A program made the position numbers and the translations under genes. A DNA stretch of 64,000 bases from Octopus bimaculoides (Eukaryota), in assembly GCF_001194135.2 (NCBI RefSeq), contig NC_068983.1, positions 31,614,721 through 31,678,720 on the forward strand. The letters run 5' to 3'. Positions 34,743 through 58,464 of this stretch are shown piece by piece (the stretch's first letter is position 1; each line of letters begins with the position of its first letter). Under the pieces are notes generated by a model. That model made no database searches, was not told where the DNA came from, and saw only the letters and a list, made by a program, of their open reading frames with translations.

Positions 34743-34784
<42 letters not shown>

Positions 34785-34926: not shown

Positions 34927-34983
<57 letters not shown>

Positions 34984-36361: not shown

Positions 36362-36512
36362 TCATTTGGCGTTAGGAAGGGCATCCAGCTGTAGAAACTC
36401 TGCCAAATCAGACTGGAGCCTGGTGTTGCCATCCGGTTTCACCAGTCCTCAGTCAAATCGTCCAACCCATGCTAGCATGGAAAGCGGACGTTAAACGATG
36501 ATGATGATGATC
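36362..36512 (+). mobile_element. Young 5'-truncated RTE-type 3' end with (GAT)n tail
   Basis: Nearly identical to 42515-42660 and to the reverse complement of 52855-53000. Confidence 0.8.
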
Positions 36513-38740
36513 ATCTATACTAACTTAACAGCTACAATACACAACAATATAGGCTGGCACTCACACTTACATGTTGGTTTCCCAAATGCTCATGGTCATT
36601 ACAGTGAGCTTAGTTTACACAAACATAAAAGCATTTTTAATGTTAGTGAACTGGAAATTAAATCAAAGGTATGCCCAAGGCCTTAAATTAAGTTAAAGAT
36701 AGCAATAAAACAAGTAGCACTTAAGTTACCAACATTTTGATTATTATCTGGTACATGAAGCTGATCTTCAATATGGCTGATGAACATATCTTGACAACCA
36801 ATCATAGATAAGATCAAATTGTGAAATCAATGCATGTGATATAAATTCATCAGCTAAGATACATATGTGGAGTCTACAAAAAGAGGATAGTACTGTTGTT
36901 ACCATTATTGCTTGCTATATGAAAATACACAGATAGATATCACAGTATGTTGGTAACAATAAATATATCGTTAACACAAAAAAATCACATCAACATTGTT
37001 CTATGATGTCATATTCTGCAAGTTTCACTGAAATTTGAGGGATGTGTGATTCAATTTTCACTATGTGTATTCCTTTTTCTATTTACTCTTGACTCAAGAA
37101 GATAATCAATATATGTTAATACCTCAGGGTGGTGGCAAAATCCTAGCAAGTTAAGTATGGGATGCAGATTCAATTCCAGGTTGAGCCATTTCAATCATTT
37201 GTTTCTCACATCTGCATTATCTGGCCACAATCAAGACAGTGGGGAGAGAGAGATAGTCTCTTCCAAGTTGACTTCCTAACAAGGATTAATAGGATGTTTT
37301 CATTTACATTTCACACACACAAACACACATTGCTCTGTATGTACATGCATGTGTATATACAGATGTGTGTGCATGTGTGTACATGTACACACACACTTGC
37401 ACAGACTAAGAAACGGAGATTTTACCAACTTAACCAAACCGAATAAATATCCAGCACTGATAAAATGTAATAAAATATCTCATGGAAAATGTAATGCTTT
37501 CAGACAAGTTAATATTTTGTTGTAAGAATTAAAGCCACAGGATTTTGTCATGGAACAAAGTTGTCTAAAGATATATAGAGCATGGTTTACACATTGTTGC
37601 AGAATAATAAATATACTTATATATAAACAAAAAATATCGTTATTCACAAAATAACATACCTTAAGCATGAAACTGAAAAGAGGAGGCCTAACAAAGGGTA
37701 TTTCTTTTTATCTGTCTAATATCACTTCATGAAAATATTAGCAGTTAATTCACTATCTTAAATTACATTACTGAACAAAAAAAGAAAAGCATGCTTTATT
37801 ATGGGATAAAATGTGCCAGAAAATATAAAAGCAAGATTACATCAGAGCCTTTGCATTACAACAAATATGACATAATTTGAATTCAAATAATGAACTTCAA
37901 ATTAACATATTAAAATTTTTATTGTTTCTCTGAAAAAATATATAACAACGGACAGATTTAATGACAACTACATTAGCAACAATGACAGAGGAATTGCAGA
38001 ATAGACAAAGGTTAAATGCAATATATCCAATGCTCTTAGATATCTTTGAAATTTAATGCTTAGGTCTGGGCCCTAGCTTCCTGACGTTCAATACAAGAGA
38101 TAAATTTCTCCTAGTTAGGATGTCAATCAATTTTATGTACAATTTCTAAATGATCTGCCATCTAGTTTCAAAATTTAAGTGAACTAAGATACTGTTAAAA
38201 CAAAGTATCCTATCCCAAAACATAATAAAACAAAATAAAGCAGCTAATTTGAAGTCACAGCCATAATCAGTCCAATTACTTATCTATTTTGCTTCTGCTG
38301 GATAAATAAGCTTACACTTTTGATGATATTGAATAGAAAAGAAACCCTTCATTCTTTTGTTAACTAAATCTACTTTAGTGCTGTAAAGCACCAACTACGC
38401 ATCCTCTTTGTCCCCACCTTCTCATCACACATATACACTTCATAGGATCATCTGAATACTATCAAATTAAAGTAACTCAATTTGCACATTCTTACTAAGT
38501 CACCAATTCTGCTCTGACTACTGCTAGCCACAAATGTGCTTCAATTCTCACCCTACTAAAGCAGCTAAGAGGATAACCATTACTAACTTCTTAATTCTTT
38601 ATATAACAAAAACCCGCAACTGCCAAGACCCTCAAGTGATTTATTTGCAACTGCACTTCAGCATTACACTGCAATGCCTACAAGAAACTTTCATGCATTG
38701 ATTGACCTGCAAGCTCTCTGATCTCAAAAATTGCTGGCAG

Positions 38741-38778
<38 letters not shown>

Positions 38779-39399
38779 TACTTATCATTCCTGAACAAAG
38801 ATAGCACTGTAAATAGAACTCTTACTGAAAAAGAGCCATGTTTACTGTGTGCCTTTGTACACACTCAAAATAAACAAAAAGTTAATGTCCAAATTCCTTT
38901 TGCATCATTACCACATACACATAGTTACTAGGTGCAAAAATTTCACCAATCACTCCAAATCAACAAGATATCTAACCCTAGCAATGGCTTTCCAATTTTC
39001 TTCAAACAGTCAATTTCTATCCTCGCCAAAATTTTCAACTTTTCTCTCTGTAGGAATCAACCTTAATGTATGGAAACACACTCTGACTATGCCAAGTACC
39101 ATTCTATAACCCTCACTTCCAATAACTCAAAGGTGATGTAAACAATCATGAACAACCACCTCCATCACTTTCAGTCTCTCTTTTCTCACTGATTTCCAGT
39201 ACAGTTTCTGCAGAGCCAGGTCGAACAGAGACTCGCTTTGCTATGTTATATAACAGTAGGTACCAATGTGGGTCAACATCACTAAAATCTGGGATCAGAA
39301 ATACCAATTTAAGCTGCCTATGGATTTCCTACATATCTCAAATCAGGAAAATACTGTCAAAGTGTTCCTTGGTACCTTGCACTAATGGGATCCCTCCAG

Positions 39400-40150
39400 C
39401 TCATTCTATCAACTATGGGTAACCTGTAAGTTATTATATTATGTCTTTCACATGCTTACTTCCTGCTCCTTAAAGGTAGCAACAAGTATGTCACTACCAC
39501 GGATTAATAACACTTGCTGCTACTTTTAAGTATATAAACTCCTACATCGATGATACTGCAGTTCACTTCTTTTTAACTTTCAACATCATCCATATGACAC
39601 CCCATGTCAGATATGAACTACCCTCTTTCAGCAACACTCAGCAATTACATATACCAACTTAAGACTCTCTCTTCTTATACATGAACAATTCAGATGGTCT
39701 CTCATGGTGACATCACACAGCCAAACTGCTTTAGAGTCATATAAAATCCCAATTTTACAAAACTCAAATGCATCTACATTATAGCACAATGCACAAATCT
39801 GGAATAGTTCTGCTGTGACATACACAAACAGATACCATGTCCAACTAAAAGTCATTCAGTTGATTGGTGGAAATTCTCTTACCAAAATGCTACAACTACT
39901 AGTGTATAGATATGTTGCTGTTTCATTCTTTCTTTTATTACTACTACTACAGTCTCTGTTATTCTGAAATAGCAAGCTATATACTACATCTATCCACTGA
40001 TTCACTCAACCCTCCTCTTCCTGTCCTCCCTACCAAAATACTGCACTCATCAAGAATTCTCTTGTTACCAATGTTTTTCCTGCAGATGTTGACCTACAAA
40101 AGTCTAAACTGGACACAAATTATGTCCATCTCACCACTCCGTGAAGGACT
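39400..40150 (+). mobile_element. Decayed CR1/L2-group LINE RT fragment
   Basis: NSYIDDTAVHF (a YADD-like motif) at about 39540, then IWNSSAVTYT. Confidence 0.4.
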
Positions 40151-40322
40151 ACAAATGTCATGAATGCTGCTTCTCTTCTACTGACTGATTTTAGAAAATG
40201 TGTTATTACCAGTAGTCAAATTAAAGTAGTAATGATTCATTGCTCTTTATACTTGTGTGGAATTTCATTAATGCAAAATATAAATGGCCAAAATATGTGA
40301 CAAAAATATATAAAAAGCATAC

Positions 40323-40353
<31 letters not shown>

Positions 40354-40361
40354 TAATCCTT

Positions 40362-40572
40362 TCTACTATAGGCACAAGGCCTGAAATTTGGTGGAGGGGA
40401 TAAGTTGATTACATTGACCCCAGTGCTCAAATGGTACTTATTTTATCAGCCCCGAAAGGATGAAAAGCAAAGTTAACCTCAGCAGAATTTCAACTAAGGA
40501 TGTGAAAAGCCAGAACAAATGTTGCTCAGTATCTTGTCCAACATGTTAACTATTCAGCTAGCTCACCACCAC
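40362..40572 (-). mobile_element. SINE family A copy with (AAT)n tail
   Basis: Full core, close to the apparent family consensus. Confidence 0.85.
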
Positions 40573-40573
40573 C

Positions 40574-40622
<49 letters not shown>

Positions 40623-40843
40623 CAACAATAATTTTGTACACCAGCACAAAGTCACACATTTGTAAAGGAGGGAATAACTCCATTAGTTTCCTAGTATTTG
40701 TTTTATGAATCTCTGATAAAAGAGTTGAAACATTAAGTAGACCTTGCAGCTTAGAAAGTCAGAATGTAGAGTGATATAACTAAATACTACAAGGCAGCCA
40801 ATATAGCACTTAAACCATTTCTGCCACTCTACTACCTTGTACA

Positions 40844-40898
<55 letters not shown>

Positions 40899-42096
40899 TA
40901 CAATGATAATAATACTAATGAGCTTTATTTTCTGTATCTGTTATGGTTCTAACACCCAAACTAGTTCATTATTTTGAATCAGTATTTTAAAATTTAGTCG
41001 CCAAATAAATCATGATTAACTGAACGTTTATATATGCATATACAAAGAATATGAAACAACATATATCAGAGAGGTGCTAATATAAAAAAAATGTGAGGGA
41101 AAATGTGTTCCCTAATACTTTCTCATTTGTCAGGCTTTTAGACTGTATGTAAGTTTTATGTCTCTATATTTATGTACATTTCCACTACATAAAATCACAA
41201 CTTTATAACTGTATAGTATTGTTGTTGTTCAACCCAAGATTGGCTCTGAACAAGTGGACTTATGATTAAAGGCATTTTAGCTAGATTTGGCTGCTATTTC
41301 TAACAATTTCATAGAGGTGCCCCTCATCACTTCTTTGGATCTCTTCTTGGGTGCAAGTTATATATATTGAGTTTGGTGAATTTTATTAACTGATTTATCA
41401 TACCAACACATCACAGATTACTTTAGAGCTTTTCTTTCTTTTCTTTTTTTTTTTTTTTTTTGAGGGGTGAGGGCTCTTTGATAATTGTGTATGAGAGCTT
41501 GTGTTTATTTGTATAACAATTAAATCACTAGTTTCCATGGATTAGTTTGTACTCTTGATAATTATGTGTCTGGATTGAAATAAAAGCATGAAACCAAACA
41601 GAACTAAAGTTAATATCACTTAACACCAAAGGCACAGCTATGTGAAAAACAGTTCACTTCACAACTATATGGTTTCAGGTTCAATCCCATGGCACTACTC
41701 TTGGACAAGTGATTTCTACCATTTACCTCAGCTCAATGGAAAACTAATGAGTGAAATTTGGTAGATGAAAACTGTGTAGAAGCTCATCGAGGGGACCATT
41801 TCTGTTCTTGAGCAGTACACTTAATCCATCAACCAGTCTAACATAATTTGGTTCTTGGACACCTTTAACTGGGTTGCAAATATTCAGATCAGATCTCAGA
41901 TCTGTGACAGACATTCTCCCAACCTTCCACTACTCAAGGAAGTCCTGAAAAATATTATAAGTACTATTTTTCCTCTAACTAAACACAAAAAAAAATTTCA
42001 TCCAAAATAAATACTATTAAATTCTATATTCATACCTACCATACACATACAAACGCATACCACGATTCAGTTAATTTTTGTTCTCAGAAGATAATA

Positions 42097-42156
<60 letters not shown>

Positions 42157-42159
42157 GTA

Positions 42160-42645
42160 ATGGTTTCAAATTTTGGAACAGGGCCAGCAGTTTTTGAGGA
42201 GAGGGGGAAGTCAAATGCATCAACCCCAGTACTTGACTGGTACTTATTCTATTGATCCCAAAAGGATGAAAGGCAAAGTCAACCCTGACAGAGTTTCATC
42301 TCAGATCATAAACATAGACAAAAATACTGCTAAGCATTTTGTCTGGTGTGCTAACATTTCTTCCACGAGCGAGATCGTTGCTAGTGCCCCTGGACTGGCT
42401 CCTGTGCAGGTGGCACATAAGATACACCATTTTCAGCATGGCCGTTGCCAGTACCACCTGACTGGCCTTTGTGCCGGTGGCATGTAAAAGCACCCACTAC
42501 ACTCTCGGAGTGATTGGCGTTAGGAAGGGCATCCAGCTGTAGAAACTCTGCCAAATCAGATTGGAGCCTGGTGTAGCCATCTGGTTTCACCAGTCCTCAG
42601 TCAAATCGTCCAACCCATGCTAGCATGGAAAGCAGGACGTTAAAC

Positions 42646-42676
<31 letters not shown>

Positions 42677-42867
42677 CTACCTTATTTGGCACAAGGCCAA
42701 CATTTTTTAGGTTAAGTGGTAATTCGATTTCATTGACCCCAAGGCTCAACTGGTAATTATTTGATCAACCCCAAAAGGTGAAAGGTAAAGTTGACCTCGG
42801 TGGCATTTGAACTCATTTTAACTGATGCAGTAACAACCTGCCAGCTCACTGCCTTAGTAATAATAAC

Positions 42868-42904
<37 letters not shown>

Positions 42905-43082
42905 TTCCTTTCTACTCTAGGCACAAGGCCCGAAATTTAAGGGAAAGGGACTAGTAGATTACATTGACCCCAGTGTGTCACTGGTATTTAATTTATCAAC
43001 TTGAAAGGATGAAAGGCAAAAAGTTTGAACTCAAAACAAAGATGGACAAAATGCCATGAAACATTTTGCCCAGCGTGCTGCT
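42160..43082 (-). mobile_element. Three tandem SINE A copies with a nested plus-strand RTE-type 3' end (42365-42677)
   Basis: Cores at 42160, 42680 and 42905. The RTE tail interrupts the head of the first SINE. Confidence 0.75.
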
Positions 43083-43944
43083 AATAATAATAATAATAAT
43101 AATGTGCATCAGTACACACAACAATCCTAATTAATCTAGGAATGTGGACAGTTGATGAAAATAAAATTTATCAAAATATTTAACACACACAAAATTCAAA
43201 CAAAGTAACAGTTTTCTCAATCCAACAATTAATCAAATTATAGCAAATATGAAAATAATTTTCTTTTCTAAAAAATGTACTGTAAAACCTTATTAAAATA
43301 ATAGTTTTTTATTAAAATATTAAAACTAATCTAACTTAAGTGTATCGTATGTTTATGTTGACAATCTACAAACTGGAGTTGGTTTCTGTTACTGTAAGCA
43401 TCATAAACATTATAGGCGCACACACACACACACGTGTGTGTGCATACATGCACAGTTACCATACAGAGAGATTATAATGTGCATTATAATTTTGCTTAAC
43501 GGATAAAAAGGAGAGGAAAAAAGCAGCACCATTTTCAAATACTGATTCAGTTAGCACACATTTTGAACTAACCATGATAAAGGTGAAACAAACTACACCG
43601 GGTTTTCAAACAAAAATCACACATACACACTGTATAACATTTTAATATAACATGTTCCTTTAACTTTTTCCTTTATTTTGAATATTTGCTATAAAGAGAT
43701 AAATTAGATAAATCGATTTTGGGGACTTAATTTTCAAGCAACTGCTCTTCATGACTTGCATTTTAATGAATTGTTTCTTAAGAATTAACACCAAACAAAT
43801 GATCTAATAGATGATGGTTTAGCTACATTTAAATGATGAGCATTTATATCAAGGGATATTTTTCAGAGATATATGTTTAATATGAAAATTAAACTATACA
43901 GAAAGAGTTACTTTAAAGAATATTTGCAGATAAAACAATGATTA

Positions 43945-43949
43945 CATAA

Positions 43950-44015
<66 letters not shown>

Positions 44016-44017
44016 AT

Positions 44018-44058
<41 letters not shown>

Positions 44059-44220
44059 CAAAGATGTGTATGCACATACACACATATGTGTGTGTGTGTG
44101 TGTGTGTGTAGCTATATAATTACATAAGTATACATATGTATACAAGCATAAAGACATAGATACATGGACATGTATACACACATATATGCAAACATATACA
44201 TATATACATAAATGCATAGA

Positions 44221-44258
<38 letters not shown>

Positions 44259-44563
44259 CATACATACATATATATATATATACACACACATACATAAATC
44301 CATACACATATGCATAAATCCATAAGCACATGCACAAATGCATACATAGATATGCATAAATGAATACACATATATGCATAAATGCATACACATATATGCA
44401 TAAACACATACACATTCATGCATATACATACATACATCTTGATACATATACACATATACATTCATACATATACACACATGCAGATTCATAGATACACACA
44501 ACCATACATATATATATGTGTATAAACATACATATATATATATATACACACACACATATATAT

Positions 44564-44614
<51 letters not shown>

Positions 44615-44973
44615 AATACACAGACATATACAGAAAAAAATACAAATAAAGACATATATAAATACACACATATGCACACACATTCATACATGTATAGGTA
44701 AAATAGGACAAACAGAATGAGGGAAATGAGACAGACAGTTACACAGCACAAGAGGTTACAATAGGTAGACAAAATACCCAAAGGTGATGGATAGAAAGTA
44801 AACACAAAACGAATTAACAATATAAGCTGTGCACAGTGAATTGTATGCCAAAAAAATAGGAAAAGTAGACTAGCATTTTGGGTGACACATACACACACAC
44901 ATGTATATGTACAAACACATATACATGCCTATATATACATGTATATATGTGTGTGTATATATATATCTATCTA

Positions 44974-45046
<73 letters not shown>

Positions 45047-45274
45047 NNNNNNNNNNNNNNNNNNNNNNNNNNNNNNNNNNNNNNNNNNNNNNNNNNNNNN
45101 NNNNNNNNNNNNNNNNNNNNNNNNNNNNNNNNNNNNNNNNNNNNNNNNNNNNNNNNNNNNNNNNNNNNNNNNNNNNNNNNNNNNNNNNNNNNNNNNNNNN
45201 NNNNNNNNNNNNNNNNNNNNNNNNNNNNNNNNNATACACACACACACATATATATGTCAATGTGTGTATGTACA

Positions 45275-45320
<46 letters not shown>
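43945..45320. repeat. Large compound microsatellite/minisatellite block
   Basis: (TA)n, (CA)n and degenerate units of about 20 nt (atacacatatatgcataaat). Confidence 0.9.
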
Positions 45321-45323
<3 letters not shown>

Positions 45324-45798
45324 ACAAATGAATAAATGAAGAATGAAGGAAAGAAAAATAAATAAATAAATAAATAAATAAACCAGTCAAATAAAATTAT
45401 GAATTACTGCAACCCTAATGAACCACCAGTCTGGGGAGGAAATCAAGTACATGATGCAGAAGTAAGACCTATATTTCGTACTAATTGCATTGGTAGGAGT
45501 AGATCAATCATCTCAATATTTCATCTTGCCACCTGTAAACAGAAATCAAATATTTGGCCACCAACATTTGACTAATTGTTTAAAAAGATTATATAAAAAA
45601 AAAATGAAAAGGGTGGGTTGATAAGAGCCACAATATGTACCAATAGGGAATATGATATTGTAATAGAGCTGAGTGTTAGGAAGCAGTTAGCTAAGTAGAA
45701 GAGAGAAGCAGAAAATAAAGAGGCAAGGTACAGTCCCATTAGTTAGGTGAGATTTTAGTATATTATAAGCAGTGACAGCAGTATTCAGAGATTTTTAC

Positions 45799-45900
45799 CT
45801 CCCAAACTGGAGAGGGAGCTAGCCAAACTGCTGCTGCCAAGCCGCTGGGTGGAATCTTCAGGACGATCAGGAACATGCGTGGAAGTGTTGGAGCGCTTAC
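45799..45900 (-). CDS. AAK1: Probable 102-nt symmetric (phase 1-1) cassette exon of the AAK1/BMP2K orthologue
   Basis: GC-rich island in an AT-rich intron with acceptor catcttgcag| and donor GGAG|GTAAAA. Encodes (G)KRSNTSTHVPDRPEDSTQRLGSSSLASSLSSLG with no stop, in frame with both neighbouring exons; Ser-rich like the rest of the tail. Confidence 0.6.
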
Positions 45901-45932
45901 CTGCAAGATGTTCACCAGAGGGTGTAAGTGGG

Positions 45933-45978
<46 letters not shown>

Positions 45979-46849
45979 TATACATACAGCTAGTTTACAT
46001 CATTTAACATTTTTTTGGTTTTTAACATGTGCACACACATACATACATACACACACTGAGTAATAAATACAGTTTTACATACACATACATATGTGCATCA
46101 ACATATAGGGATACACATTCACAAGTTTACTCACAGCAAAGTTTAAAACAGATCAAAACACTAGTAGTGGTAATATTACTATGAAGATACATTCACCACT
46201 CAAAAATATGCTCATTTCCAATAAAGAAACTATACAATACAAAACGCTTTAATTACTCAAACTAGTTAATATATAAATATTTTCTAAAACTTTAAAAAAT
46301 ATCAAGATAAATTAATTTTCTGAATTTTATAGAACAATCAACTAGACAGGGTACAACAGTATCAATTTATTTTTAATAGTGCACATGGTAATACATGGAT
46401 CTCAGGATATACAGCAAAGATGACACCCACAGCAAGAAGGGCAGTCGCTGATGAAGATTACAGCACTAGCAGAGCTTTAGACAACATATCTTATTCACTC
46501 CTACATATAGCAAATATCTTCCAAAGTACTAAAGTAAACACAATCTTCTTTACAAAGTTCTGGTCAAACTATATATATCAGGAAGGATAAGTCAATCATT
46601 TCGTCTCACTCATAAAGGTATCTAAGTTCAACTTTCATTTGGTATCAGGTGATATGATTAACCGTCTTGCACACAGATACTCAAACAAATGGAAACCAGT
46701 TTGTAGATAAATATTTGCAGTTCCCTCTTGCTTTTTCCATCTTCTTCTCCTCTCAGTTGCCCTCCTATGCTAACACTACTTTACGTTACATAATTCATTT
46801 AAATCATCTTTCATCAATTTCTCGCTCACATCAAAGAACAGAAAACTCC

Positions 46850-49350
46850 ACTCACTCCTCATTTCCATTACACCCACTGCCACTACTCCAACTCCTCCCC
46901 TATCCCTCTCTCTCCCTGATACGCTCCGCCACCGTCACCAACCCACCCCGTCTCTCCCAACCCCCACCTACATACCTACGTCCCCTCCCTCCCAGACTTC
47001 CACCACCCCACCCCTACTTCTGTCCCATCCACCCCTTCTCCACTTCAGTCTGTTGCTACCATTCCTCCAGACCTTCCCCTCTCTCTCCAGATATTCCCCT
47101 CTCTGAGGTGGAGCGCTCCCTCTTCAGTAGGGGACTGTGTTTCATCCTCCTCACTCCATCCAGCAATGAATTTCGGACTCGTGCCAATATCCGCAACTTT
47201 GTGCACCGTGTTAGGTTGTGTGAGCTTTTCTGTGACACTCCACCTGCATCTAGTGAGGAGGACTACTTCACCAACCTGGGTTGCCAACCATCCCAGTGGA
47301 TGCCAGCTCCTGGCCAGTTCCAAGCAGTCGATCTTTTTGCGGATGCCTGCCAGCATGCTGTGGACCGGTTTGATTTTTCCAAGTGTCCCCGACATCTGAA
47401 CATCTCCCCAACTGAACTTTCAGCCCTTCGATGTCTCCGATGCCGCATGGACATCATCATAAAACCAGTCAACAAGGGTGGAGCCGTGGCAGTGTGACAC
47501 GTGGACCTCTACAAGTTAGAAGCTCTCTGCCTACTTCAAAACACCTCCTTCTACAGCCCTCTGCTCTTCGACCCCATACCCAGCTGCTAACAGACTGTGT
47601 CCTCCACTACTCATGACCTCATTTCCTCCTCCCATCTCCCCCCACCACCTCTAACCTCATTGTCCGCACCCCTCGCACCCCCACAATTTACTTCCTCCCC
47701 CAAATCCCCAAACCTAACAACGCTGGCCACCCCACCGTTTCTGCCTGCAAATGCCCCACCGAACTCATCTCCAGATATCTTGACCATGTCCTTGCCCCAC
47801 TAGTAGCTTCCCTTCCCTCTTACATCCATGACACCAACCATGTTCTTCGTTTGTTCAACTCTTTCTCCTTCCCTCCTGACCCATCTAAACTTCTCTTCAC
47901 TCTTGACATCAAGAGTCTATACACTGTGATCCCTAACTACGAGGGGCTGCGTGCACTCCAACATTTCCTTGACCTTCAAACCAACCCACAACCTGACACA
48001 TCCACACTCCTTCGTCTGGCTGAACTTGTCCTCTGACTTAACTGCTTTTCATTCATGGGTGATTTTTACCAGCAGGTCTCAGGAGTGGCCAAGGGAACAA
48101 GAATGGGCTCCAACTATGTGAACCTGTTCATTGGCTATGTTGAAGCACAAATATTCTCAAGTTTCACTGGTCCCACTCCTTAAATATACGGTCGTTATAT
48201 TGACGACTGTATCGGTGTGACCTCACTCTCCCATGAACAGCTAAACTCCTTCCTCTCTTTTGTCAAATCTTTTCATCTTGCCCTCCACTTCTCCTGCACT
48301 ATTTCTCACACCTCAGTCGCTTTTCTCAACATTTTGGTCGGCATTCATCACTCCACTCTCCCCACCTCCATCCACAACAAACACACAGACTCACACTCTC
48401 ACCTCCACTTCTCCTCTTCCCACCCTAAACACACCAAGCTCTCCATCCCCTTTTCCCAAATCCTCTGTCTGTGCAGGCTCTGCAGTGACACACCGGCCTC
48501 GCGCCATTTCCACTCTCCCGATTACTCTTTACAACACAAGTCTGTGTTTGGATTGTCCTTGCACAGAGGCCATCCAGACTCCCTTCTTCACCATGAACAA
48601 GGATTAACCTTCGCTCCTTTTCTCCACATGGGCTCAATTCTCCTCCCCACTTCATCTAACCCTCCTCCTCTCTCACCTACTTCCTCCCACCCACATCTCT
48701 CTTGCTCTGGCACCTACTTCCTCTCTTCACTCCTACCCACCTTCTGCCTTCCACCCCTCTCCCTTCATCATCACCTCTCCCTCATTACCCCACACTACAC
48801 ATTCCAACCCGACCATCCCTATACATCCCATGCCCCCAACCCATCCCTTAGACCACACCCTTACTTCCCCACTCTCACCTCCCCCACACCCCAACGCCAC
48901 CACACTACACCATATCACACCACATCACACCACCCTGCACACACTAGCACTGACCACTTCCCAACACCCACACCAGTGCACACACTAGCACTGACCACTT
49001 CCCAGCACCTACACCATCATCCACACATCTACACATGCACAAACGCACATATCAAAGTCACCAGCCTCCTTCCACAAGCACATACATGCCCTCACATACA
49101 TACGCACACGCACCTTCGTTTTGGGATCACCACTACTTTATTATCTCCCCTTCTTCCTAGCTTTCCTGTGTGACTCCTCTGTCCGGCATCCACCATGATA
49201 GATCTGTTTTCTCTCCCTGTTTATTTCTGTGTTCCTTTCTGTCGAAGAGTGTAGGCTTGAAACATAAAAGGCTTTCTCACTTCCCGAGCATTAAACTAAT
49301 ACATCTGTTTGTTGTTTACACACCCGTCTTCATCTTTTGATTTTTCGTAA
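46850..49350 (+). mobile_element. Penelope-like retroelement (RT present, inactivated)
   Basis: LSEVERSLFSRGLCF, IIIKPVNKGGAVAV, LFTLDIKSLYTVIP, GVAKGTRMGSNYVNLF and RYIDDCIG, with stops and frameshifts; ends in a pLTR-like 3' segment. Confidence 0.9.
49234..49271 (+). ncRNA. Degenerate minimal type I hammerhead ribozyme in the Penelope pLTR
   Basis: CCUUU-CUGUCGA-A-GAGU-GUAG-GCUU-GAAA-CAUA-AAAGG: stem I of 5 bp, a core with an A6>U variant, and stem II with two G-U pairs. Confidence 0.55.
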
Positions 49351-49393
49351 ATTCTCACTATATATATGTATATATATGTATATNNNNNNNNNN

Positions 49394-49446
<53 letters not shown>

Positions 49447-49624
49447 GATGACTATGACAAAAATAGTGATCATAATGATAATGATATGAAGCTAAATGAA
49501 AAAAAAATTTTTATCAGTATCATCATCATCCTCTGGATTGGACAGTTTCATCACAAGAGCAAGCAAAAGATCCCCAAAATGTTCAATGCCATACATATGT
49601 GTATGCGTATATATGTACATGTGT

Positions 49625-52600
49625 ATGCAAATATACATCATCATTATTTAACATCTGTTGTCCATGCTGGCATGGGTTGGACGGTTTGACTGGGCTGGCA
49701 TGCTGGAAGGCTGACCCAGACTTCAGTCTCGTTTGGTATGGTTTTTTACAGCTAGATGCCCTCCTACTACCAACCACTCTGAGAGTGTAATGGGTGCTTT
49801 TATGTGCCACCAGCATAGGTGCCATTTGTGCAACACCAAGGTGCGTTTATGTGTCACTGGCATGGGTCCCATTTTGCATGACATCAGTATCTACCACAAG
49901 TGTGGTTTTGCTCAGCTTCATGGGTCTTCTTCTCTAGCACAACATAAAGCCAAAGATCTTGGTCATTGCCTCTATGAGGCCCAACACTCGAAAGGAACTC
50001 AGCCATTTTGCCTCCATGAAGCCCAATGCTCGAAAGGAACTAAGTCACTTTGCCTCCATGAGGCCCAAAGTTCAAAAGATGTTTTTTATGTGCCACCAAC
50101 ACAAGTGCACTTGGCTTGACAGGTGCTCTCAAGCACAGCACATTGCGAAAGATCTTGGTCACCAGTCATTGCCTCTGTGAGGTTCAAAGTTCAAAGATCA
50201 TGCTTCACCACCTTGTCCCATGTCTTCCTGGGTCTACCTCTACCACAGGTTCCCTGCACAGTTAGATATCGGCACTTCTTTACACAGCTGTCCTCATCCA
50301 TATGCATCACATGACCATACCAGTGCAATCGTCTCTCTTGCACATCACATCTGATTCCTCTTATGCTGAACTTTTCTCTCAAGATGCTTACACTCTGTCA
50401 AACATGTACACTGACATTGCACATCCAGCAAAGCACACTGGCTTCATTTCTTTCAAGCCTACGCATGTACTCAGCTGTCATAGCCCATATTTCACTGCCA
50501 TGCAGCATAACTGTTCACACACGGGCATCAAACAATCTGTCATTCACTCTGAGAAAGAGGCCCTTTGTTGCCAGCAGGGGTAGGAGCTCTCTGAACTTTG
50601 CCCAGCCTAAACTTATTCTCAGCTATGCTCTTGGAGCACCCACATCCACCACACTACTAACTTGGTTACCTAGATAACAGAAGATATCTACTCCTGCTAG
50701 CTTGCTCCATTGACAGTTGATGGAGTCTATTTTCTGCACCTTTTCAGTATTTATTGTACCTGTTTCCTTGTTAACCTTCCTCTGATGTTGCTGCACCTTT
50801 CATGTGTCCAAAGCTTACATTGGGTACATCTTATGGAGTTTCTACCTATGCCTTCTCTACAGATTGAACAGAGCCATCTACCTGAAGGGATTTCCGCTTT
50901 GTCTGCCTTCCTACTTGCTATGACTTTGATTTTTGCTAGGTTAACTTTAAGGCCCTTCAATTCTAGACCTTGCTTCCATACCAGGAATTTCTTCTCTGGC
51001 TCCAGAAGTGATTCAGCAATAAGAGCAAGGTCATCAGCATAGAGGAGCTCCTAGGGGCAGCCTGTCTTGAACTCCTCTGTTATTATTGGAGGACTATGAT
51101 GAACAAGAGAAGGCTGGGCACCAATCCTTGATGAACCCCTACTTGTACCCTGAATTCTTTACTGTACTCGTCCAACCTCACCTTACTGGTAACATCCCTG
51201 TAGAAGGATTGTATGGCTCTCACCAGCCACTCGTCTATCCCTAGTTTCTGCATTGACCACCAGATAAGGGATGAGGGGACTCTGTCAAAAGCTTTCTCTA
51301 AGTCAACAAAAGCCAAGTACAGTTACTTTTGGCCAGGTATTTCTCCTACAGTTGCCTTACCAGAAATATAGCATCAGTGGTGCTTCTACCTGGCACAAAA
51401 CCAAACTGCATCTCATCTAGACTAACTCTAATTAGTTGGGCTATGACTCTCTCCATAACTTTCATCACCTGATCCAACAATTTGATACCTCTGTAGTTAT
51501 CCCTACCTCAGGCGTCACCTTTACCCTTATAGCAGTTGAATATGGTGCCGAGTCATTGGGTATGATTCCTTCATGAACCACCTGAGTTACAAAACGGTTG
51601 ACTAGATTATAATCCACACCACCAGATACTTAAAGCAAATCAAAAGTGATTTCTGATGGGCAGGGGGGGGGGGGGGGGTGCTTTCCCCATCTTCATATCC
51701 TTAATTGTTTTATTTACCAGGATACTGTTGATTTGGGTTATATGTCAGGTTGCTCTTGAGCGCCACTGGTATCATGTAACTCAGTACAACCTGTCGCATA
51801 GTCAAGTCATCAGCAACTAAACTGGCAACCCCATCAAGCTTGCTTGGTGAGGAGGGTGATTGTTGGACACCCTGCAGGACAGAAAATAAGACCTTTCAAA
51901 GGGCAGAAGAACTACTGTGTAGTCAACAGTCAATTCAACAAGTACCTTGTCATGGTGAAGTGCCTGTGTGCTCCATTGACATGAAAGCTATGCTGGATTG
52001 AGAGAAATCTTCAGGCAGGTCTTACCAGGCAAGACAAGTCAAAAGAGACAGATAAAACCTTAATGACAATAAATTGAAACGTCACCAGCAGGGCATGGAT
52101 TTAGTTATTGGCAAGACCTAACAGATCAGATTCCTGGCTTTGAATTAGCAGGATGTCATGCAGAGGATGTTGAATACAAGGCAATGGATGAGACACTAAT
52201 ATTCCTAGTCAGATGGAAACTGCAGGACCACATGGAGCAGTGCCCTGTGACTCCTATAGTATGCGCAACCGAAACCCCTATCTGGAACGTCCCATAGGAC
52301 GACCTAGATGAGCTGATTCGGGTAGCTGGTCCCTCAATTGGATCAACATTTAGCAGACTCTCCTCCTCCCGTTCATTCTCCACATTCAGCAGTCTTTCAT
52401 TGCAGACTCATTAAAAACAAGTGCACCATCATCCATGCAGAGACATTTCGCTATGACACCACAATTTTCTCTCACACAGTCTTGCAATCCAAAATATTTC
52501 AGTTCTTTGGTACTCATGACACTACACATAGGCAAACATCTTTTTTGCTTCTCCCTTGGCTAGATATACCCTGCTGCCCCCATTCTTCCAGGCCTGTTTC

Positions 52601-52790
52601 TTTGCTCTGATGGCCCTGTCTACAGTATTATTCCATCATCACGTTACCCTAAGTCTGGAAGGGACTTTGCACCAGCCACAGATTTGGTCTACCATACTCA
52701 GCAAGCTATTTCAGTTGAAAAATATATCTCATTTGGTCACATTTCATGAGCACATCTTGGTCATCCTATGAACTTTTCAGCTGACCCTTG
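49625..52790 (-). mobile_element. 5'-truncated, inactivated RTE-clade LINE
   Basis: AFVDLEKAFDRVP, VGVHQG, LLYADDLALIAES, KGLKVNLAKIKV, RLHWYGHVMHM and GRGRPRKTW, then a 3' UTR with a (GAT)-like tail. Interrupted at about 51680-52150. Confidence 0.9.
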
Positions 52791-52842
<52 letters not shown>

Positions 52843-52845
52843 TCA

Positions 52846-53170
52846 TCATCATCATCATCATCATCGTCGTCTAACGTCCGCTTTCCATGCTAGCATGGGT
52901 TGGACGATTTGACTGAGGACTGGTGAAACCGGATGGCAACACCAGGCTCCAATCTAATTTGGCAGAGTTTCTACAGCTGGATGCCCTTCCTAACGCCAAC
53001 CACTCAGAGAGTGTAGTGGGTACTTTTACGTGTCACCCGCACGAAAACGGCCACGCTCGAAATGGTGTCTTTTATGTGCCACCCGCACAAGCCAGTCCAG
53101 GGGCACTGGCAACGATCTCACACGAAAATCCTACAGGAGCCAGTCAGGCGGTACTGGCAACGGCCACGCT
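52846..53170 (-). mobile_element. Young RTE-type 3' end with (GAT)n tail
   Basis: Reverse complement of 42365-42677. An older related copy follows at 53225-53545. Confidence 0.8.
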
Positions 53171-53990
53171 CATATATATATATATATATGTATACATATA
53201 TGTGCATGTGTGTGTGTGTCATTCTCATAATCATCATCATTTAAAACGCCTACTTTCCATGCTGGCATGGGTGGGATGGTTTGACAGAAACTAGCCAGGC
53301 GAAAGCCTGCACTTGACTACTGTGTCTGTTTTGGCACAGGTTTTATGGCTGGATGCCCTTTCTAACACTAATCACCCAACAGAATGAACTGAGTGCTATT
53401 TACATGTCACAGGCATAGTTGAGGTCAGTTATGGCAAGGTTTTTTACAGCTGGATGCCCTTCCAAATACCAACCACTTTATAGTGTGGACTGGAAGCTCC
53501 AGTCACTGGGGATGACTCCTTCATGTATCACCTGGTTGACAATACGGGTGACTAGGCTATAGCCGACACTGCCACATATTTTGAGCATNNNNNNNNNNNN
53601 NNNNNNNNNNNNNNNNNNNNNNNNNNNNNNNNNNNNNNNNNNNNNNNNNNNNNNNNNNNNNNNNNNNNNNNNNNNNNNNNNNNNNNNNCATATATTCTAA
53701 TAAAATACAAATATATCTAATCCGAGTTAAAAATATAAGGTAATAATATATATTTTTTAATTGAATACAAAAGGTTTAATCAAAGCAACTAAAATTCAAA
53801 ATACCAATCCTACTACACAAATATAAGTAATATGAAGATAAAATAAAATAATTGTCCACCGACTAAAAGAATTTATTTCAAGATTAAAATACTTTTTAAA
53901 TAATTTAAAATCATTTAAAAGTATTTAAAAAGATATATATATTTGAAATGGTCTTTTACTTCCCTCAACAGATACAAGTTCATAATAAAG

Positions 53991-54164
53991 TAGACCTCCA
54001 CAGGTAAAATCCAAGTACATCCTGAAAAAAGTTGTCTTTCCTCACAAAGATTTTCAAAAGTTCATATAACTACACTGGTGTATTTATATGAACTTTTAGA
54101 AGTTTTTGTGAGGAAAGACAAAACTTTTTTCAGGATGTACTTGGATTTTAGCTGTGGAAGTCTA
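53991..54164. repeat. Near-perfect 174-nt palindrome (foldback)
   Basis: 85- and 87-nt arms with a 2-nt loop (tacac-tg-gtgta); 7 mismatches plus a 2-nt indel by hand alignment. Confidence 0.95.
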
Positions 54165-54769
54165 TATGTGAATGTAATTTATGCACATCCACAAATTAGC
54201 ATGCATGTCGCTCAAATTTTAAGACATTCGTCATGACCCTAGCTCCATTTCCGTCAACTTTTTCTCTCAGAGGCACCCGCATATAGCTGTAAAAATCAAT
54301 TTTCAACCCTAACTTTTACCAATTTTGAAGTTTGCTTACTTGACGAAGTGAAAGTGTGCATAAGCATGCGAGGGTGAGAGAGAAATTGTGTGTTGATGTA
54401 TGTGTCTGTGTGAGAGGGGAAGTGAGGGAGAGATAGAAATTGTTTGCCAGCGTCTAACAAAAAAAGTAAAGAAAAAGTGGGAGAGGGAGACAGAAAGTGA
54501 CTAACAAAAGAAAAGGTAGGTGTGAGTAAGGAAGACAAAGTGTCAGCGTTCATCAAAATTGAAAATATATAAAATGCTTTTGTTTTTCTTAAACATGAGA
54601 TATAGTTTCAAATATAGGATGTTTTTGAAAGACACTATATTTTATAATGAGATTATATATACTTTCTCACACAACAATTAAAATATATTTATTTTAAATC
54701 ATTTACTGTAAGCTGTAAATGTGAAACTTCATTACAATTGGAAATTTCTAGGAACAAAGAGCCATCATC

Positions 54770-55075
54770 GATGACAAGTTTGCACTAAACCCTCAAGCAA
54801 TACATTGTAGCATGAAAAGCCATACCACCAAAGTCATAAAAGCTATTTCCCAAAATGGTCTGGGTTAGGATCTGGAATCTAAACAAACATGACAGTGATG
54901 CAATGTGGTTAAATGAGCTACAAATGAGTACAAATGAGATGCTAGCATCTCTCCCAAAATTTATTATCAAAAATGGAACTCTTCTGATAGTCAGTACAAA
55001 ACTACCAAATGGAAAAATCACCAGGGAGAGACCTGGTAGTTGGTTATTAGTAGAGAACACTGACAGAATCTAAGT
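54770..55075 (+). mobile_element. Possible R4/Dong-like non-LTR fragment
   Basis: DKFALNPQAI...VRIWNLNKHDSDAMWL...KLPNGK resembles the pre-RT region of R4/Dong elements; weak match. Confidence 0.35.
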
Positions 55076-58000
55076 TAAAGGGTTGGATGAAAGCAGGGGT
55101 ATAAGATCAGTCCCCCTTACCTTTATGTGCAGCATCATATCACTTAGCAATACCCACTTGGAGAAAGTCCTTACCATATTAGTGCTAATTCAGTGATGAC
55201 TTCTCCAACCCACATTAGCATGGATGGAAGATGCAAAACAATGATGATTATGATCACACACACATTATAATGTTTATCAATATGAGATAACAGATAAATC
55301 ATAGAATGAACCCACTACTGATCCGGAGCTAATGTGTAAACAGAAGAAAAGAGTAGTTCTTTAACTATCAAAACACAGTATCAACGGTACAGATTTTTCT
55401 TATGAGACACACTGGACTATACGCACATCACCATTTTCAAAACTAGTAGAATCTTGTATGTAAGTACAAGGGAGATGACTTCTGCAGTTTTTCTAACATA
55501 GTAGCTATGTGATATAGGAGATTATATCTAATAAAATCTTAGTGAAAGAGAGATAACTTCTATTAAAGGAACTAGTTAACATGAAATTATAGAGTGAAAA
55601 TGTACAAGATCTTATATAGAATTCAAATTTATAGATAAAAATTTACAATTCAAAAACAAAGTTCTTGGAAATATAAAGAATAATAAAGCACGATAGACAG
55701 AGGGACAAAGATTAAAAGTAAATCAAATTATGAAATAAACTGAAATAAAATAGTCTTGTAGTAAATTACTAAGGGGGGTACAGGATAAGTAATTAGGAAG
55801 ATTTGTGAGATATCAGAACCTTAAGAAAACTTAAGAGAAATGTCTGCATGGACCAAAACATTCAGACTGAGTACTGAAGTAGTCTTTTAGAAACAATATT
55901 GTCATCTTCTCAACAGTACACATACAGCTTCCTCACTCCTGCCGATATATGGCCTACTTTACTCTCTAATTCTCTACTTAATTGGTATAGTCTGTGTTGT
56001 TCTTAGTCACCAGGTATATTTCAATAAAGTTGTATATGTCAATTTTGATTTATCTCTAAAGGAGCCAGTAGTTAGCCTATCTTTTGATTATTTAACTGTC
56101 CTTCTGTCATCCTGATATATTTTTGTCTGTTGATCCTTTCCAGCCTTCTTCAGGTGCTTGTTGTATTCAGTAATGTTCTCAAGATTTCAAACCAAACCTT
56201 TATTTAATCTACAGGAGTCAATTGTGAACATTCCATTGTCCATACTAGAGATATTTTCCTGTTAGTTATTCTTCTAGTGACGTCACTTGCTCATATTATT
56301 TGATTAAACTAGGGACTGAACTAGCTAAAAGAATAATCAAAACCGCTGCTATCTGTTCATTCTTTATTAGAGGTATGTTACAACAAATTCAAAAGATCTG
56401 CTGTGCTTACGTCAGGACAGTTTAAAAAGTAGGTCAAGCCTTCATGAACAACTCTCCCAAAGGAAGCCTCCATCAAAAGAGATAAAGAACAAGAACTGTG
56501 TGTATTCCACGCAGCTGTACAAATGAATATGAAAGTGAAACCAGTCACATCTAAAAGTAAAACTAAAGGAACATTGCATCCATGGAGAAGCAGAAAATTC
56601 AAGCATGGCTATTCATTTGTGGAGGGAAAAGTGAAGTCACCAGCTCTGACAATATAAAACAGAGAACAGGAAGAATCAACACATATGCTGAGCTTTCACA
56701 ACCTCCTCAGTTGATTTGGCATAGACATGAACCTTGGATAGGAGTCTTTTATTAAGAAAGAACATTAGAACTATATATATGAGCTCCTAATTTTTATTAC
56801 CTAACTGTCCTGTGGAACAATAAAATAGTAAATACAAGTGTTGATTAAGTAATAAGTGTAGTACTTCAACTAGATAGTGAGATTAATCTCTGGGTCAATT
56901 AAACAATCTATATATTGACTTAAGTAAGTAGAGTCAGCAAGAGACATCACAAGTGGAATAACTAACAGAAGAATATCTCTTGTATGGACAAATTTGATAC
57001 AAACAATCTACCCAAGATTTAATAAAAGTTTCAGTTTGTCATAGCAATAATGTTACTGAATATGACTATTTTAATAACCAAGAGGAGGATACAAATTTCT
57101 TTATAACACACACAAATACAAGTGCATAATGAAGTGTAGGTCATTAAAAGTGGTTGTGACTTGTGGAAGACATGGGACAAACTAGTGAAGGCCGATTTCA
57201 AGATGCTGTGCACCACAGCAAAAATACTGTCCTGAAAACACCTTGGTCATGCTTGAAAATGCAGAGTCCTGTCCCTTCATCTTTACAGCCCCACCAAGCA
57301 CCCTCCACATTTCATCCCCTAACACCCATCACTCTTCCTTCTACAGCACTATTTGGCTGCTTTACAGTTATCTCCATCCACCTTCCATTTCTCATTCCCA
57401 TTATCATCCCTTCCCACACTATTTCCACCAATCACCTTTCTGTGCCTTCTGCCAACACACTCTTCCCTCTGCCATACTCTAATCTAACACCCCTCAAACC
57501 TGCTATCATGCCCCACCTACCATAGCCACCCTCATGTACTTCTACATCTCCCTCCTCATAAATCCAATGCCTTGTACATCATTCCCCTACTTTCTGATCT
57601 ATCCTACTTCATGAGCCACTTGTATCATTCTCAGCTTACCCCTCTCCATACAGGTATTTTCCATCAACTGCATCCCCACTCTTGTTCATTCACCTCAAAG
57701 CATTCATTACTCTCCTCTCACACTCTTACGACTGACCCACAGCCAGTAAAATCTCTCATAAACATCTTGTATCTTGAGATTCTCTGGCATTTTGTCACCA
57801 CCATCTCTACCTTCTCTCCAATTACTTTCAACCACCCTTATTTAGTACAGAGTTGCAATGTATTTCCTCTATAGCAAAACACCTGTGCTTGTCTCTCTAT
57901 CATACATCAACCTTTCAACACCTGGTATAAATCCACTTCCTCTCTCTTTTAAATACTCCCCTCACCCACTTAGTCAAAGGGGTGTTTTCTATTTTCTTTT

Positions 58001-58377: not shown

Positions 58378-58443
<66 letters not shown>

Positions 58444-58464
58444 CACACACACAAACACATTATA

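What the first reader, a model, noticed from the sequence alone, without database searches (positions are those of the whole stretch)
45799..45930. Candidate recursive-splicing (RS) exon splitting the 38-kb intron
On the transcribed strand the acceptor is followed immediately by a donor consensus: cttgCAG|GTAAGC. Splicing the upstream exon (...CCAG) here recreates CCAG|GTAAGC, almost identical to the original donor CCAG|GTAAGG, while the exon's own donor (GAG|GTAAAA) is weaker. This matches the ratchet-point/RS-exon layout known from Drosophila and vertebrate long introns. It would cut 38,186 nt into 15,803 and 22,281 nt. Unlike many RS-exons it is frame-preserving and would add 34 Ser-rich residues to the kinase tail. 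It is invisible in the ORF track because it is buried in a TA-repeat pseudo-ORF. The sequence layout is observed; the recursive use is inferred.
Basis: partly seen in the sequence, partly recalled or inferred. Interest (0 to 1): 0.7.

Follow-up and report, generated by a model that had tools for sequence, protein, structure and literature searches.

The report
Ordinary cassette exon with donor-like start
The flagged 102 bases are a genuine coding exon of an AAK1-like kinase gene, already present in a close relative's gene model and orthologous to an alternatively spliced oyster exon. Its donor-like first bases are real but not conserved, so recursive splicing is possible, untested and not needed to explain it.

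Summary
The sequence layout is exactly as described. On the minus strand it reads ...cttgcag|GTAAGC, a 102-nt open frame (45900..45799), then GGGAG|gtaaaa. The exon is phase 1 at both ends and lies between introns of 15,803 and 22,281 nt.

It is not a hidden ratchet point. A 1351-aa kinase (P0003), 99% identical to the window's tail, already contains these 34 residues.

The same exon exists in oysters at the same position and phase, with the same GGAG|GTAAA donor. Ostrea edulis RefSeq isoforms X1 and X2 differ only by this exon. RNA contigs from a second oyster-like species show it both included and skipped.

The donor-like start is not conserved. It is GTAAGC here (Gly-Lys), GTCACG in the oyster-like species and GAAACG in Ostrea, where the exon is still alternative. 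The octamer CAGGTAAG is not enriched in the window (3 seen, 1.4 expected).

By sequence the exon meets the published definition of a "putative annotated RS-exon". That class covers 3.6% of human exons, and 94% of those are constitutive. The regenerated site is as strong as the true upstream donor and stronger than the exon's own donor. Recursive skipping therefore remains a live but untestable minority reading.

The parts
45799..45900 (-). 102-nt coding cassette exon, phase 1 at both ends, encoding (G)KRSNTSTHVPDRPEDSTQRLGSSSLASSLSSL(G). GC is 0.57 against 0.26-0.30 in the flanks.
   Evidence: It is included in the 1351-aa protein P0003. It is orthologous to the oyster cassette exon.
45896..45903 (-). 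CAG|GTAAG: the acceptor AG directly followed by a 5' splice-site-like exon start. GT AAG are the Gly (G|GT) and Lys codons.
45901..45990 (-). 3' splice-site region. It has a weak polypyrimidine tract (Y = 0.60), a candidate branch point in acttAc, and no AG for 89 nt upstream of the acceptor. A (TA)n repeat lies about 30 nt upstream.
45790..45798 (-). The exon's own donor, GGAG|gtaaaaatc. It is weak (no G at +5), and GGAG|GTAAA is identical in both oyster orthologues.
61704..61793 (-). Upstream exon encoding ISNVKSREDLVMSGSDSSDPFSNAPFKKP(G), with donor CCAG|gtaagg. It is highly conserved across molluscs.
45901..61703 (-). Intron of 15,803 nt upstream of the exon. It contains N gaps and a reverse-transcriptase fragment.
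23518..45798 (-). Intron of 22,281 nt downstream of the exon. It contains N gaps.
21821..23517 (-). Long last coding exon (EDLVHKSPRRHS...KKLPVP*) with repeated D[VI]F..APF motifs. It has a strong acceptor (Y = 0.95).
63903..63998 (-). Next exon upstream (WNPFGEDHFSSYTEDIIFGKEFDKIRRGSNSS), at the window edge. Boundaries are approximate to a few bases.

Best explanation
This is an ordinary protein-coding cassette exon of an AAK1-like (NAK-family) kinase gene. It inserts a 34-residue Ser-rich, probably disordered segment between the DPF/APF endocytic-motif exon and the long C-terminal exon.

The exon is recognised by exon definition through a modest acceptor and a conserved, deliberately weak GGAG|GTAAA donor. 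That is the usual signature of a regulated exon.

The GTAAG at its start is most simply the Gly (G|GT) and Lys (AAG) codons following a phase-1 intron. Once the exon is joined to the upstream exon, the junction CCAG|GTAAGC is a potential donor. By analogy with annotated RS-exons in human and fly, it is expected to be kept largely silent by the exon junction complex deposited on that junction.

Shown: the exon is real, it is coding in a close relative's model, it is orthologous to the oyster exon, that exon is alternatively spliced in oysters, and the donor-like start is not conserved.

Inferred: how far it is included in this species, any EJC protection, and the function of the peptide.
For: - A protein 99% identical to the window's tail contains the 34 residues in a single collinear stretch (628 of 628 aligned).
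- That protein has a kinase domain. The orthologues are named AP2-associated protein kinase 1-like.
- The exon is a sharp GC island (0.57 against 0.26-0.30). Only the reading frame that continues the flanking exons encodes the residues found in P0003; one of the other two frames has stops. No AG occurs in the 89 nt before the acceptor.
- An oyster-like genomic contig, L006, has the same layout in miniature: the ISNVKS exon, a 725-nt intron, then a 72-nt Ser-rich exon (ctgcag|GTCACG...GGAG|gtaaag). RNA contig L001 includes that exon and RNA contig L007 skips it.
- Ostrea edulis RefSeq isoforms X1 and X2 differ only by the 25 residues GNVRHGSSSDSDPHRSSNSSRSGYG directly after APFKKP. In its genome this is a separate exon, tgcag|GAAACGTAAGG...GGAG|gtaaag.
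- The 3' end of the window exon plus its donor aligns to the oyster exon at 22 of 27 nt. Only 1 of 2000 shuffles scores as high. AGCTCCC and GGAGGTAAA are invariant in the three-way alignment.
- Base rate: 3.6% of human exons regenerate a 5' splice site, and 93.8% of those are constitutive (PMC6224609).
Against: - The regenerated site (8 of 9 consensus positions, -11.3 kcal/mol) is much stronger than the exon's own donor (-6.9). Donor competition is a main determinant of RS-exon skipping in published work (PMC6224609, PMC8605326).
- The two flanking introns are long, which is the setting where recursive splicing is known.
- I found no RNA evidence for this species in either direction. Searches returned no spliced transcripts.
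- Orthology to the oyster exon rests on position, phase, composition and a 27-nt match. The 5' half of the exon is too diverged to align.
Confidence: 0.7

Rival explanations
1. It is an expressed RS-exon of the Ubx mI/mII type. The exon is first spliced to the upstream exon. The regenerated CCAG|GTAAGC then competes with the weak GAG|GTAAAA donor. The skip isoform (KKP-E-DLV) would be produced largely by this second, recursive step rather than by one-step exon skipping.
For: - The regenerated site equals the natural upstream donor in strength and exceeds the exon's own donor.
- The exon is frame-preserving and lies between introns of 15.8 and 22.3 kb.
- The orthologous exon is alternatively spliced in oysters, so a skip isoform is plausible here.
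- Published work shows that strong RS-5' splice sites can override EJC repression (PMC6224609).
Against: - Ostrea skips the orthologous exon with a non-donor start, GAAACG. The L006 species has a poor one, GTCACG. Skipping therefore does not need recursion, and the site is not under conserved selection.
- The only protein model on record for the close relative includes the exon, and its 90% cluster holds no skip isoform.
- The polypyrimidine tract is weak.
- Most exons with this layout are constitutive.
Confidence: 0.25
2. It is a dedicated intronic ratchet point. Its purpose would be to remove the 38-kb interval in two steps, with the 102-nt exon normally discarded, as with Drosophila zero-nucleotide ratchet points or the vertebrate cryptic RS-exons of CADM2 and ANK3.
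For: - The core CAG|GTAAG motif lies in a long interval.
- A donor lies 102 nt downstream that could define a cryptic RS-exon.
Against: - The exon is in frame, stop-free, GC-rich and included in a gene model.
- It is orthologous to coding sequence in oysters, whose introns are only 0.7-2.4 kb.
- The SA|SD motif is not conserved.
- The polypyrimidine tract is weak.
- A second motif, TAG|GTAAGA at 24000, has a better tract yet lies only 483 nt from the last exon. This shows that such motifs arise by chance in this sequence.
Confidence: 0.03
3. It is a chance motif in non-coding intron sequence, read as an ORF only because of the neighbouring TA repeat.
For: - The octamer is not enriched in the window.
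- The ORF track entry is a repeat read-through.
Against: All the exon evidence above.
Confidence: 0.02

Closest known systems
Ostrea edulis AP2-associated protein kinase 1-like, isoforms X1 and X2 (XP_048764073.2 and XP_048764074.2): a 75-nt alternative cassette exon
   Same: - Same gene family.
- Same position, directly after the ...APFKKP exon and before the long tail exon.
- Phase 1 at both ends.
- Ser-rich peptide.
- Identical GGAG|GTAAA donor.

   Different: - The oyster exon is 75 nt and starts GAAACG, so it regenerates no donor.
- Its flanking introns are about 2 kb rather than 16-22 kb.
- An alternative terminal exon follows it in oysters, and that exon is not detectable in the window.
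Annotated or expressed RS-exons: human KPNA1, the alternative CADM2 isoform and others (Blazquez et al. 2018, PMC6224609), and Drosophila Ubx mI/mII (PMC8605326)
   Same: - An expressed, frame-preserving exon whose first bases rebuild a strong 5' splice site on the preceding exon.
- Its own donor is weaker.
- The flanking introns are long, as for Ubx.
   Different: Use of the regenerated site has not been shown here. Ubx mI is ultraconserved even at wobble positions (PMC8605326), whereas this exon's start varies between orthologues and its peptide differs at 2 of 34 residues even from a 99%-identical relative.
Intronic ratchet points and cryptic RS-exons: Drosophila kuz, Bx and Ubx-RP; human CADM2, ANK3 and others (Duff 2015 and Sibley 2015, as cited in PMC6224609 and PMC8605326)
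   Same: - A juxtaposed CAG|GTAAG.
- A downstream donor within about 100 nt.
- A long host interval.
   Different: Those exons are unannotated, poorly conserved, usually out of frame and excluded from mRNA, while their SA|SD motif is ultraconserved. Here the pattern is the reverse.

Membership tests
Intronic ratchet point / cryptic RS-exon | Juxtaposed 3' and 5' splice-site motif, (Y)n NCAG|GTAAGT | tested here: inconclusive
   The core CAG|GTAAGC is present. The polypyrimidine tract is only 0.60 Y, against 0.95 for the last exon. The octamer is not enriched: 3 seen against 1.42 expected.
Intronic ratchet point / cryptic RS-exon | The RS-exon is cryptic: unannotated, out of frame or stop-containing, and excluded from mRNA | tested here: not met
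   The exon is in frame and stop-free. It is included in the 1351-aa protein model P0003. It is orthologous to coding exons in oysters.
Intronic ratchet point / cryptic RS-exon | Strong conservation of the SA|SD motif with a poorly conserved exon body | tested here: not met
   The exon starts GTAAGC in the window, GTCACG in L006 and GAAACG in Ostrea. The 3' end of the exon and its donor are what is conserved. Conservation within cephalopods could not be tested: no orthologous exon lay within the 10-kb reach in L003, L004, L005 or L011.
Intronic ratchet point / cryptic RS-exon | RNA evidence: saw-tooth coverage, RS junction reads, lariats from the regenerated donor | not testable with these tools
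   No read-level RNA data are available. Searches found no spliced transcripts of this region from this species.
Annotated (expressed) putative RS-exon, in the sense of Blazquez et al. 2018 | The exon-exon junction with the preceding exon reconstitutes a 5' splice site as strong as typical canonical donors | tested here: met
   CCAG|GTAAGC matches the consensus at 8 of 9 positions. Its U1 duplex energy is -11.3 kcal/mol, against -11.8 for the gene's own upstream donor. MaxEntScan was not available, so the published 5.52 threshold was not applied directly.
Annotated (expressed) putative RS-exon, in the sense of Blazquez et al. 2018 | The exon is annotated or expressed in mRNA | tested here: met
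   P0003 contains the exon's residues.
Functionally recursive RS-exon (Ubx mI type) | The skip isoform depends on the regenerated 5' splice site (lariats, mutation of the GT, sensitivity to EJC loss) | not testable with these tools
   This needs RNA-seq, lariat reads or minigenes. As indirect counter-evidence, the orthologous exon is skipped in Ostrea without any regenerated donor.
Conserved alternative cassette exon of molluscan AAK1-like genes | An orthologous exon at the same position and phase | tested here: met
   The exon lies between the ISNVKS...KKP exon and the long tail exon. It is phase 1 at both ends, Ser-rich, and shares the GGAG|GTAAA donor. A 27-nt stretch matches at 22 positions (1 of 2000 shuffles)..
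Conserved alternative cassette exon of molluscan AAK1-like genes | Both inclusion and skipping isoforms observed | tested here: inconclusive
   This is met in Ostrea edulis (X1/X2) and in the L006 species (L001 included, L007 skipped). For the window's lineage only the inclusion form is on record.

The most novel reading that the evidence does not exclude
The flanking introns grew from about 1-2 kb, as in oysters, to 16-22 kb in this lineage. Over that expansion an ancient alternative cassette exon of the AAK1-like gene may have acquired a near-consensus donor at its first bases (GGT-AAG). Skipping would then proceed by two-step recursive splicing. No paper in the searched library mentions recursive splicing together with octopus, so to my knowledge this would be the first RS-exon documented in a lophotrochozoan, and an example of a cassette exon converted into an RS-exon.
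Probability: 0.2. Interest if true: 0.5.

Novelty: new member of a known kind. Interest (0 to 1): 0.22.

Why it matters
The main value is as a calibration case. A textbook-looking CAG|GTAAG 'ratchet' in a 38-kb interval turns out to be the Gly-Lys start of a conserved and already modelled coding exon. Motif-only calls of recursive splicing in long-intron genomes will pick up many such exons.

If the regenerated donor is used, this would extend RS-exon biology to molluscs. It would also link it to regulated inclusion of a Ser-rich linker beside the AP-2/clathrin-binding motifs of an endocytic kinase. That would be of modest interest to specialists.

Tried and rejected
- **Word-indexed protein searches.** I searched with the spliced tail peptide and with the exon peptide. 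These returned only two short genomic ORFs of the upstream exon, and no transcripts or orthologous exons.
- **Pfam on the tail.** No family matched.
- **Looking up P0003's own locus.** It is not on record.
- **Searching for the exon in the reachable 10 kb of L003, L004, L005 and L011, and in the 19.7-kb Haliotis and 11.4-kb Lymnaea introns.** Nothing was found. This is inconclusive, because the exon is short and fast-evolving and the introns are long.
- **An early idea that L001 showed the Ser-rich segment contiguous with the upstream exon, meaning no intron.** I rejected this once genomic L006 showed that L001 is a spliced RNA and the segment is a separate exon.
- **An idea that the shared CAGGTAAG at both intron ends is a target-site duplication from an intron-creating insertion.** I dropped it because the intron position is shared with oysters, whose exon starts differ.
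- **The oyster alternative terminal exon (EHRHKRRYSLPSWRP...).** It is not detectable in the window.
- **Accession searches for the SRA and ERZ samples, and a search for 'recursive splicing' plus 'octopus'.** Both found no papers. One search was a badly posed search and gave nothing useful.
- **Testing whether the exon evolves faster than the rest of the tail.** The count is 2 of 34 differences against 6 of 594, Fisher p = 0.065, which is not significant.
- **MaxEntScan scores.** These could not be computed because the model tables are not available offline. I used U1 duplex energy and consensus match instead.

Full report
**1. The observation**

Reading the minus strand confirms the layout base for base.
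- The acceptor is ...catcttgcag|GTAAGC at 45901|45900.
- The exon is a 102-nt open segment, 45900..45799.
- The exon's own donor is GGGAG|gtaaaa.
- The upstream exon (61793..61704) ends AAACCAG|gtaagg.
- The last exon starts at 23517 behind a very pyrimidine-rich acceptor.

Translation shows phase 1 on both sides. With the exon the protein reads ...APFKKP-GKRSNTSTHVPDRPEDSTQRLGSSSLASSLSSLG-EDLVHK.... Without it the protein reads ...APFKKP-EDLVHK....

N gaps in both introns make these assembly estimates.

The regenerated junction CCAG|GTAAGC matches the CAG|GTAAGT consensus at 8 of 9 positions. Its predicted duplex with the U1 5' end is -11.3 kcal/mol. The true upstream donor gives -11.8 and the exon's own donor gives -6.9. 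The factual part of the finding is therefore correct.

**2. Is the motif more than chance?**

On its own it is not.
- CAGGTAAG occurs 3 times in the window against 1.42 expected, and 16 of 100 shuffles reach 3.
- YAGGTRAG occurs 8 times against 6.4 expected.
- A second juxtaposed site, TAG|GTAAGA at 24000, has a better pyrimidine tract (0.80). It lies only 483 nt from the last exon, where splitting the intron would serve no purpose.

What sets 45900 apart is not the motif but the exon behind it.
- It is a GC island (0.57 against 0.26-0.30 in the flanks).
- The frame that continues the flanking exons encodes the residues found in P0003. One of the other two frames has stops.
- No AG occurs in the 89 nt before the acceptor.

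**3. What the gene is**

An exhaustive HMMER search with the spliced tail found P0003. It is a 1351-aa protein on a 174-Mb contig, 99% identical to the window's tail over all 628 residues in one collinear stretch.

P0003 has a protein kinase domain at residues 26-283. Named orthologues are 'AP2-associated protein kinase 1-like' in Haliotis and Ostrea, 'AAK1-like' in Mya and 'Ap2-associated protein kinase 1' in Plakobranchus.

The source names of P0003 are withheld by the tool, so I could not confirm 'cephalopod'. The nearest named relatives are molluscs.

P0003 contains the exon as GKRSNTSKHVPDHPEDSTQRLGSSSLASSLSSLG, which differs from the window at two residues. The exon is thus already modelled as coding sequence in a near-identical genome. 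P0003's 90% cluster has a single member, so no skip isoform is on record.

**4. The decisive comparison: oysters**

Short ORFs matching the conserved upstream exon led to several loci from one oyster-like species.
- L006 (ERR13913548, 6.5 kb) is genomic DNA.
- L001 (SRR11285530) and L007 (SRR20648601) are RNA-derived contigs from the same species, 99.3-99.6% identical to L006.

L006 carries the whole arrangement in miniature:
- the ISNVKS...KKP exon, with donor CCAG|gtacaa;
- a 725-nt intron;
- a 72-nt Ser-rich exon, ctgcag|GTCACGTCAGG...GGTTACGGAG|gtaaag;
- a short alternative terminal exon;
- the long tail exon.

L001 has the 725-nt intron removed and the Ser-rich exon included. L007 joins the upstream exon directly to the next exon and skips it.

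The tail ORF of L006 is 76% identical to a cluster that holds two Ostrea edulis RefSeq isoforms. X1 (1342 aa) and X2 (1317 aa) are identical except for 25 residues, GNVRHGSSSDSDPHRSSNSSRSGYG, directly after APFKKP. In the Ostrea genome (L008) this is a separate 75-nt exon, tgtactgcag|GAAACGTAAGG...GGTTACGGAG|gtaaag, flanked by introns of about 2.1 and 2.4 kb.

**5. Orthology with the window exon**

Four features are shared: position, phase (1 at both ends), Ser-rich composition, and the 3' end with its donor.
- Window: AGCTCCCTCTCCAGTTTGGGAG|GTAAA
- L001: AGCTCCCGCTCGGGTTACGGAG|GTAAA

These match at 22 of 27 positions. The alignment score is 29, against 13.6 +/- 2.2 for shuffles, and only 1 of 2000 shuffles reaches it. 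None of 288 other L001 windows does. In the three-way alignment AGCTCCC and GGAGGTAAA are invariant. The 5' half is too diverged to align.

Gastropod models (Haliotis, Lymnaea) go straight from the upstream exon to the long exon. I could not detect the small exon in their 19.7-kb and 11.4-kb introns. This region of the protein is a variable-length linker.

**6. What this means for the recursive-splicing idea**

The exon and its weak GTAAA donor are old, and the exon is alternatively used in oysters. The donor-like start is not old. The Gly codon split by the intron is GGT-AAG in the window, GGT-CAC in the L006 species and GGA-AAC in Ostrea.

Ostrea skips the exon although CCAG|GAAACG cannot act as a donor. 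Skipping of this exon therefore does not require recursion. The third position of that Gly codon behaves like an unconstrained synonymous site.

The acceptor's pyrimidine tract is weak (0.60), whereas ratchet points usually have a strong one; that comparison rests on my own knowledge of the ratchet-point literature. [quoted passage not shown] Here each of those features is reversed. I therefore reject the 'ratchet point splitting a 38-kb intron' reading.

**7. What remains possible**

By the published definition, any exon that rebuilds a 5' splice site on the preceding exon is a 'putative RS-exon'. That applies to 3.6% of human exons (n = 6,837), of which 93.8% are constitutive because the exon junction complex masks the site (PMC6224609). 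The fly EJC likewise suppresses cryptic splice sites and prevents re-splicing of mRNA (PMC8184009, title and abstract as listed).

This exon belongs to that class, and at the strong end of it. The regenerated site equals the natural donor, the exon's own donor is weak, and the downstream intron is 22 kb. Donor competition is a documented determinant of RS-exon fate, although exceptions such as Ubx-m1 and msi are included despite weaker own donors (PMC8605326).

I put about 0.25 on the regenerated site contributing materially to a skip isoform in this species. I put about 0.7 on it being an ordinary included or alternative exon whose donor-like start is incidental Gly-Lys coding.

**8. Function of the peptide (inference only)**

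The segment is Ser/Thr-rich (13 of 34 residues) and lies in a variable linker between the DPF/APF motif exon and the long tail, which carries repeated D[VI]F..APF motifs. A basic residue three positions before a Ser or Thr near the start (KRSNT here, VRHGS and VRHSS in the oysters) suggests a phospho-regulated linker. Its optional inclusion could tune the adaptor-binding tail. None of this was tested.

**9. Novelty and score**

No paper in the searched library mentions recursive splicing together with octopus. The exon itself is already in a public gene model, its alternative use is annotated in oysters, and its sequence class is common.

I rate it a new member of a known kind, with low interest (0.22). 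The most novel reading that survives is a lineage-specific conversion of an old cassette exon into a functional RS-exon as the introns expanded. I give that reading a probability of about 0.2.

Noticed in passing
window 50191-51316 (minus strand), inside the 15.8-kb intron: A reverse-transcriptase fragment. The ORF at 51083-51316 hits Pfam RVT_1 (E = 6e-8). It is probably a decayed LINE-type retroelement on the same strand as the gene. Neighbouring long Pro/Ser-rich ORFs at 46667-47497 and 48217-49173 (plus strand) have no Pfam match.
   Followed up: partly
window 23996-24003 (minus strand; first base after the AG is at 24000): A second juxtaposed acceptor/donor motif, ccatgtag|GTAAGA. Its pyrimidine tract (0.80) is better than that of the flagged site, yet it lies only 483 nt upstream of the last exon. 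It is a useful internal control for how easily such motifs arise.
   Followed up: partly
window 61788-61795 (minus strand): The upstream ISNVKS exon also begins with GT (ctgtag|GTATAT). This is because a Ser codon, A|GT, is split by a phase-1 intron. The regenerated junction there is a poor donor.
   Followed up: no
L006:1600-1690, L008:18150-18227, L001:633-716: Oysters have a conserved short alternative terminal exon (EHRHKRRYSLPSWRP[HQ]GVCCAPLVEE...) just downstream of the Ser-rich exon. In the oyster-like species (L001/L006) the reading frame ends there in a stop codon. L001, whose 3' end aligns to L006 about 1.3 kb downstream of this exon's acceptor, carries an AATAAA near its 3' end. This would give a short-tailed AAK1-like isoform. 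No counterpart was detectable in the window.
   Followed up: partly
L008:17870-17885 (Ostrea edulis): The Ostrea cassette exon starts GAAAC|GTAAGG. A strong donor-like hexamer therefore sits 5 nt inside the exon rather than at its first base. This is the layout that Blazquez et al. describe for EJC-repressed cryptic microexons.
   Followed up: no
window 45047-45233, 49384-49393, 53589-53688, 60332-60580, 34785-34926, 6850-7639, 8702-9163: Assembly gaps (runs of N) flanked by TA, CA and TG microsatellites. One gap lies only about 570 nt downstream of the exon on the transcribed strand. Intron lengths and nearby regulatory sequence are therefore incomplete.
   Followed up: no
window 45933-45980 (minus strand): A perfect (TA)n run of about 48 nt ends about 30 nt upstream of the exon's acceptor. 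It lies inside the 89-nt AG-free zone. Whether it forms a hairpin or affects branch-point choice is unknown.
   Followed up: no
P0003 against the window translation (tail residues 37, 42, 67, 140, 256, 346, 511, 584): There are eight amino-acid differences in 628 residues between the window and the public protein. The underlying base changes, inferred from the window's codons, are mixed and not only A-to-G. This looks like a sister species or another individual rather than RNA editing or the same assembly.
   Followed up: partly
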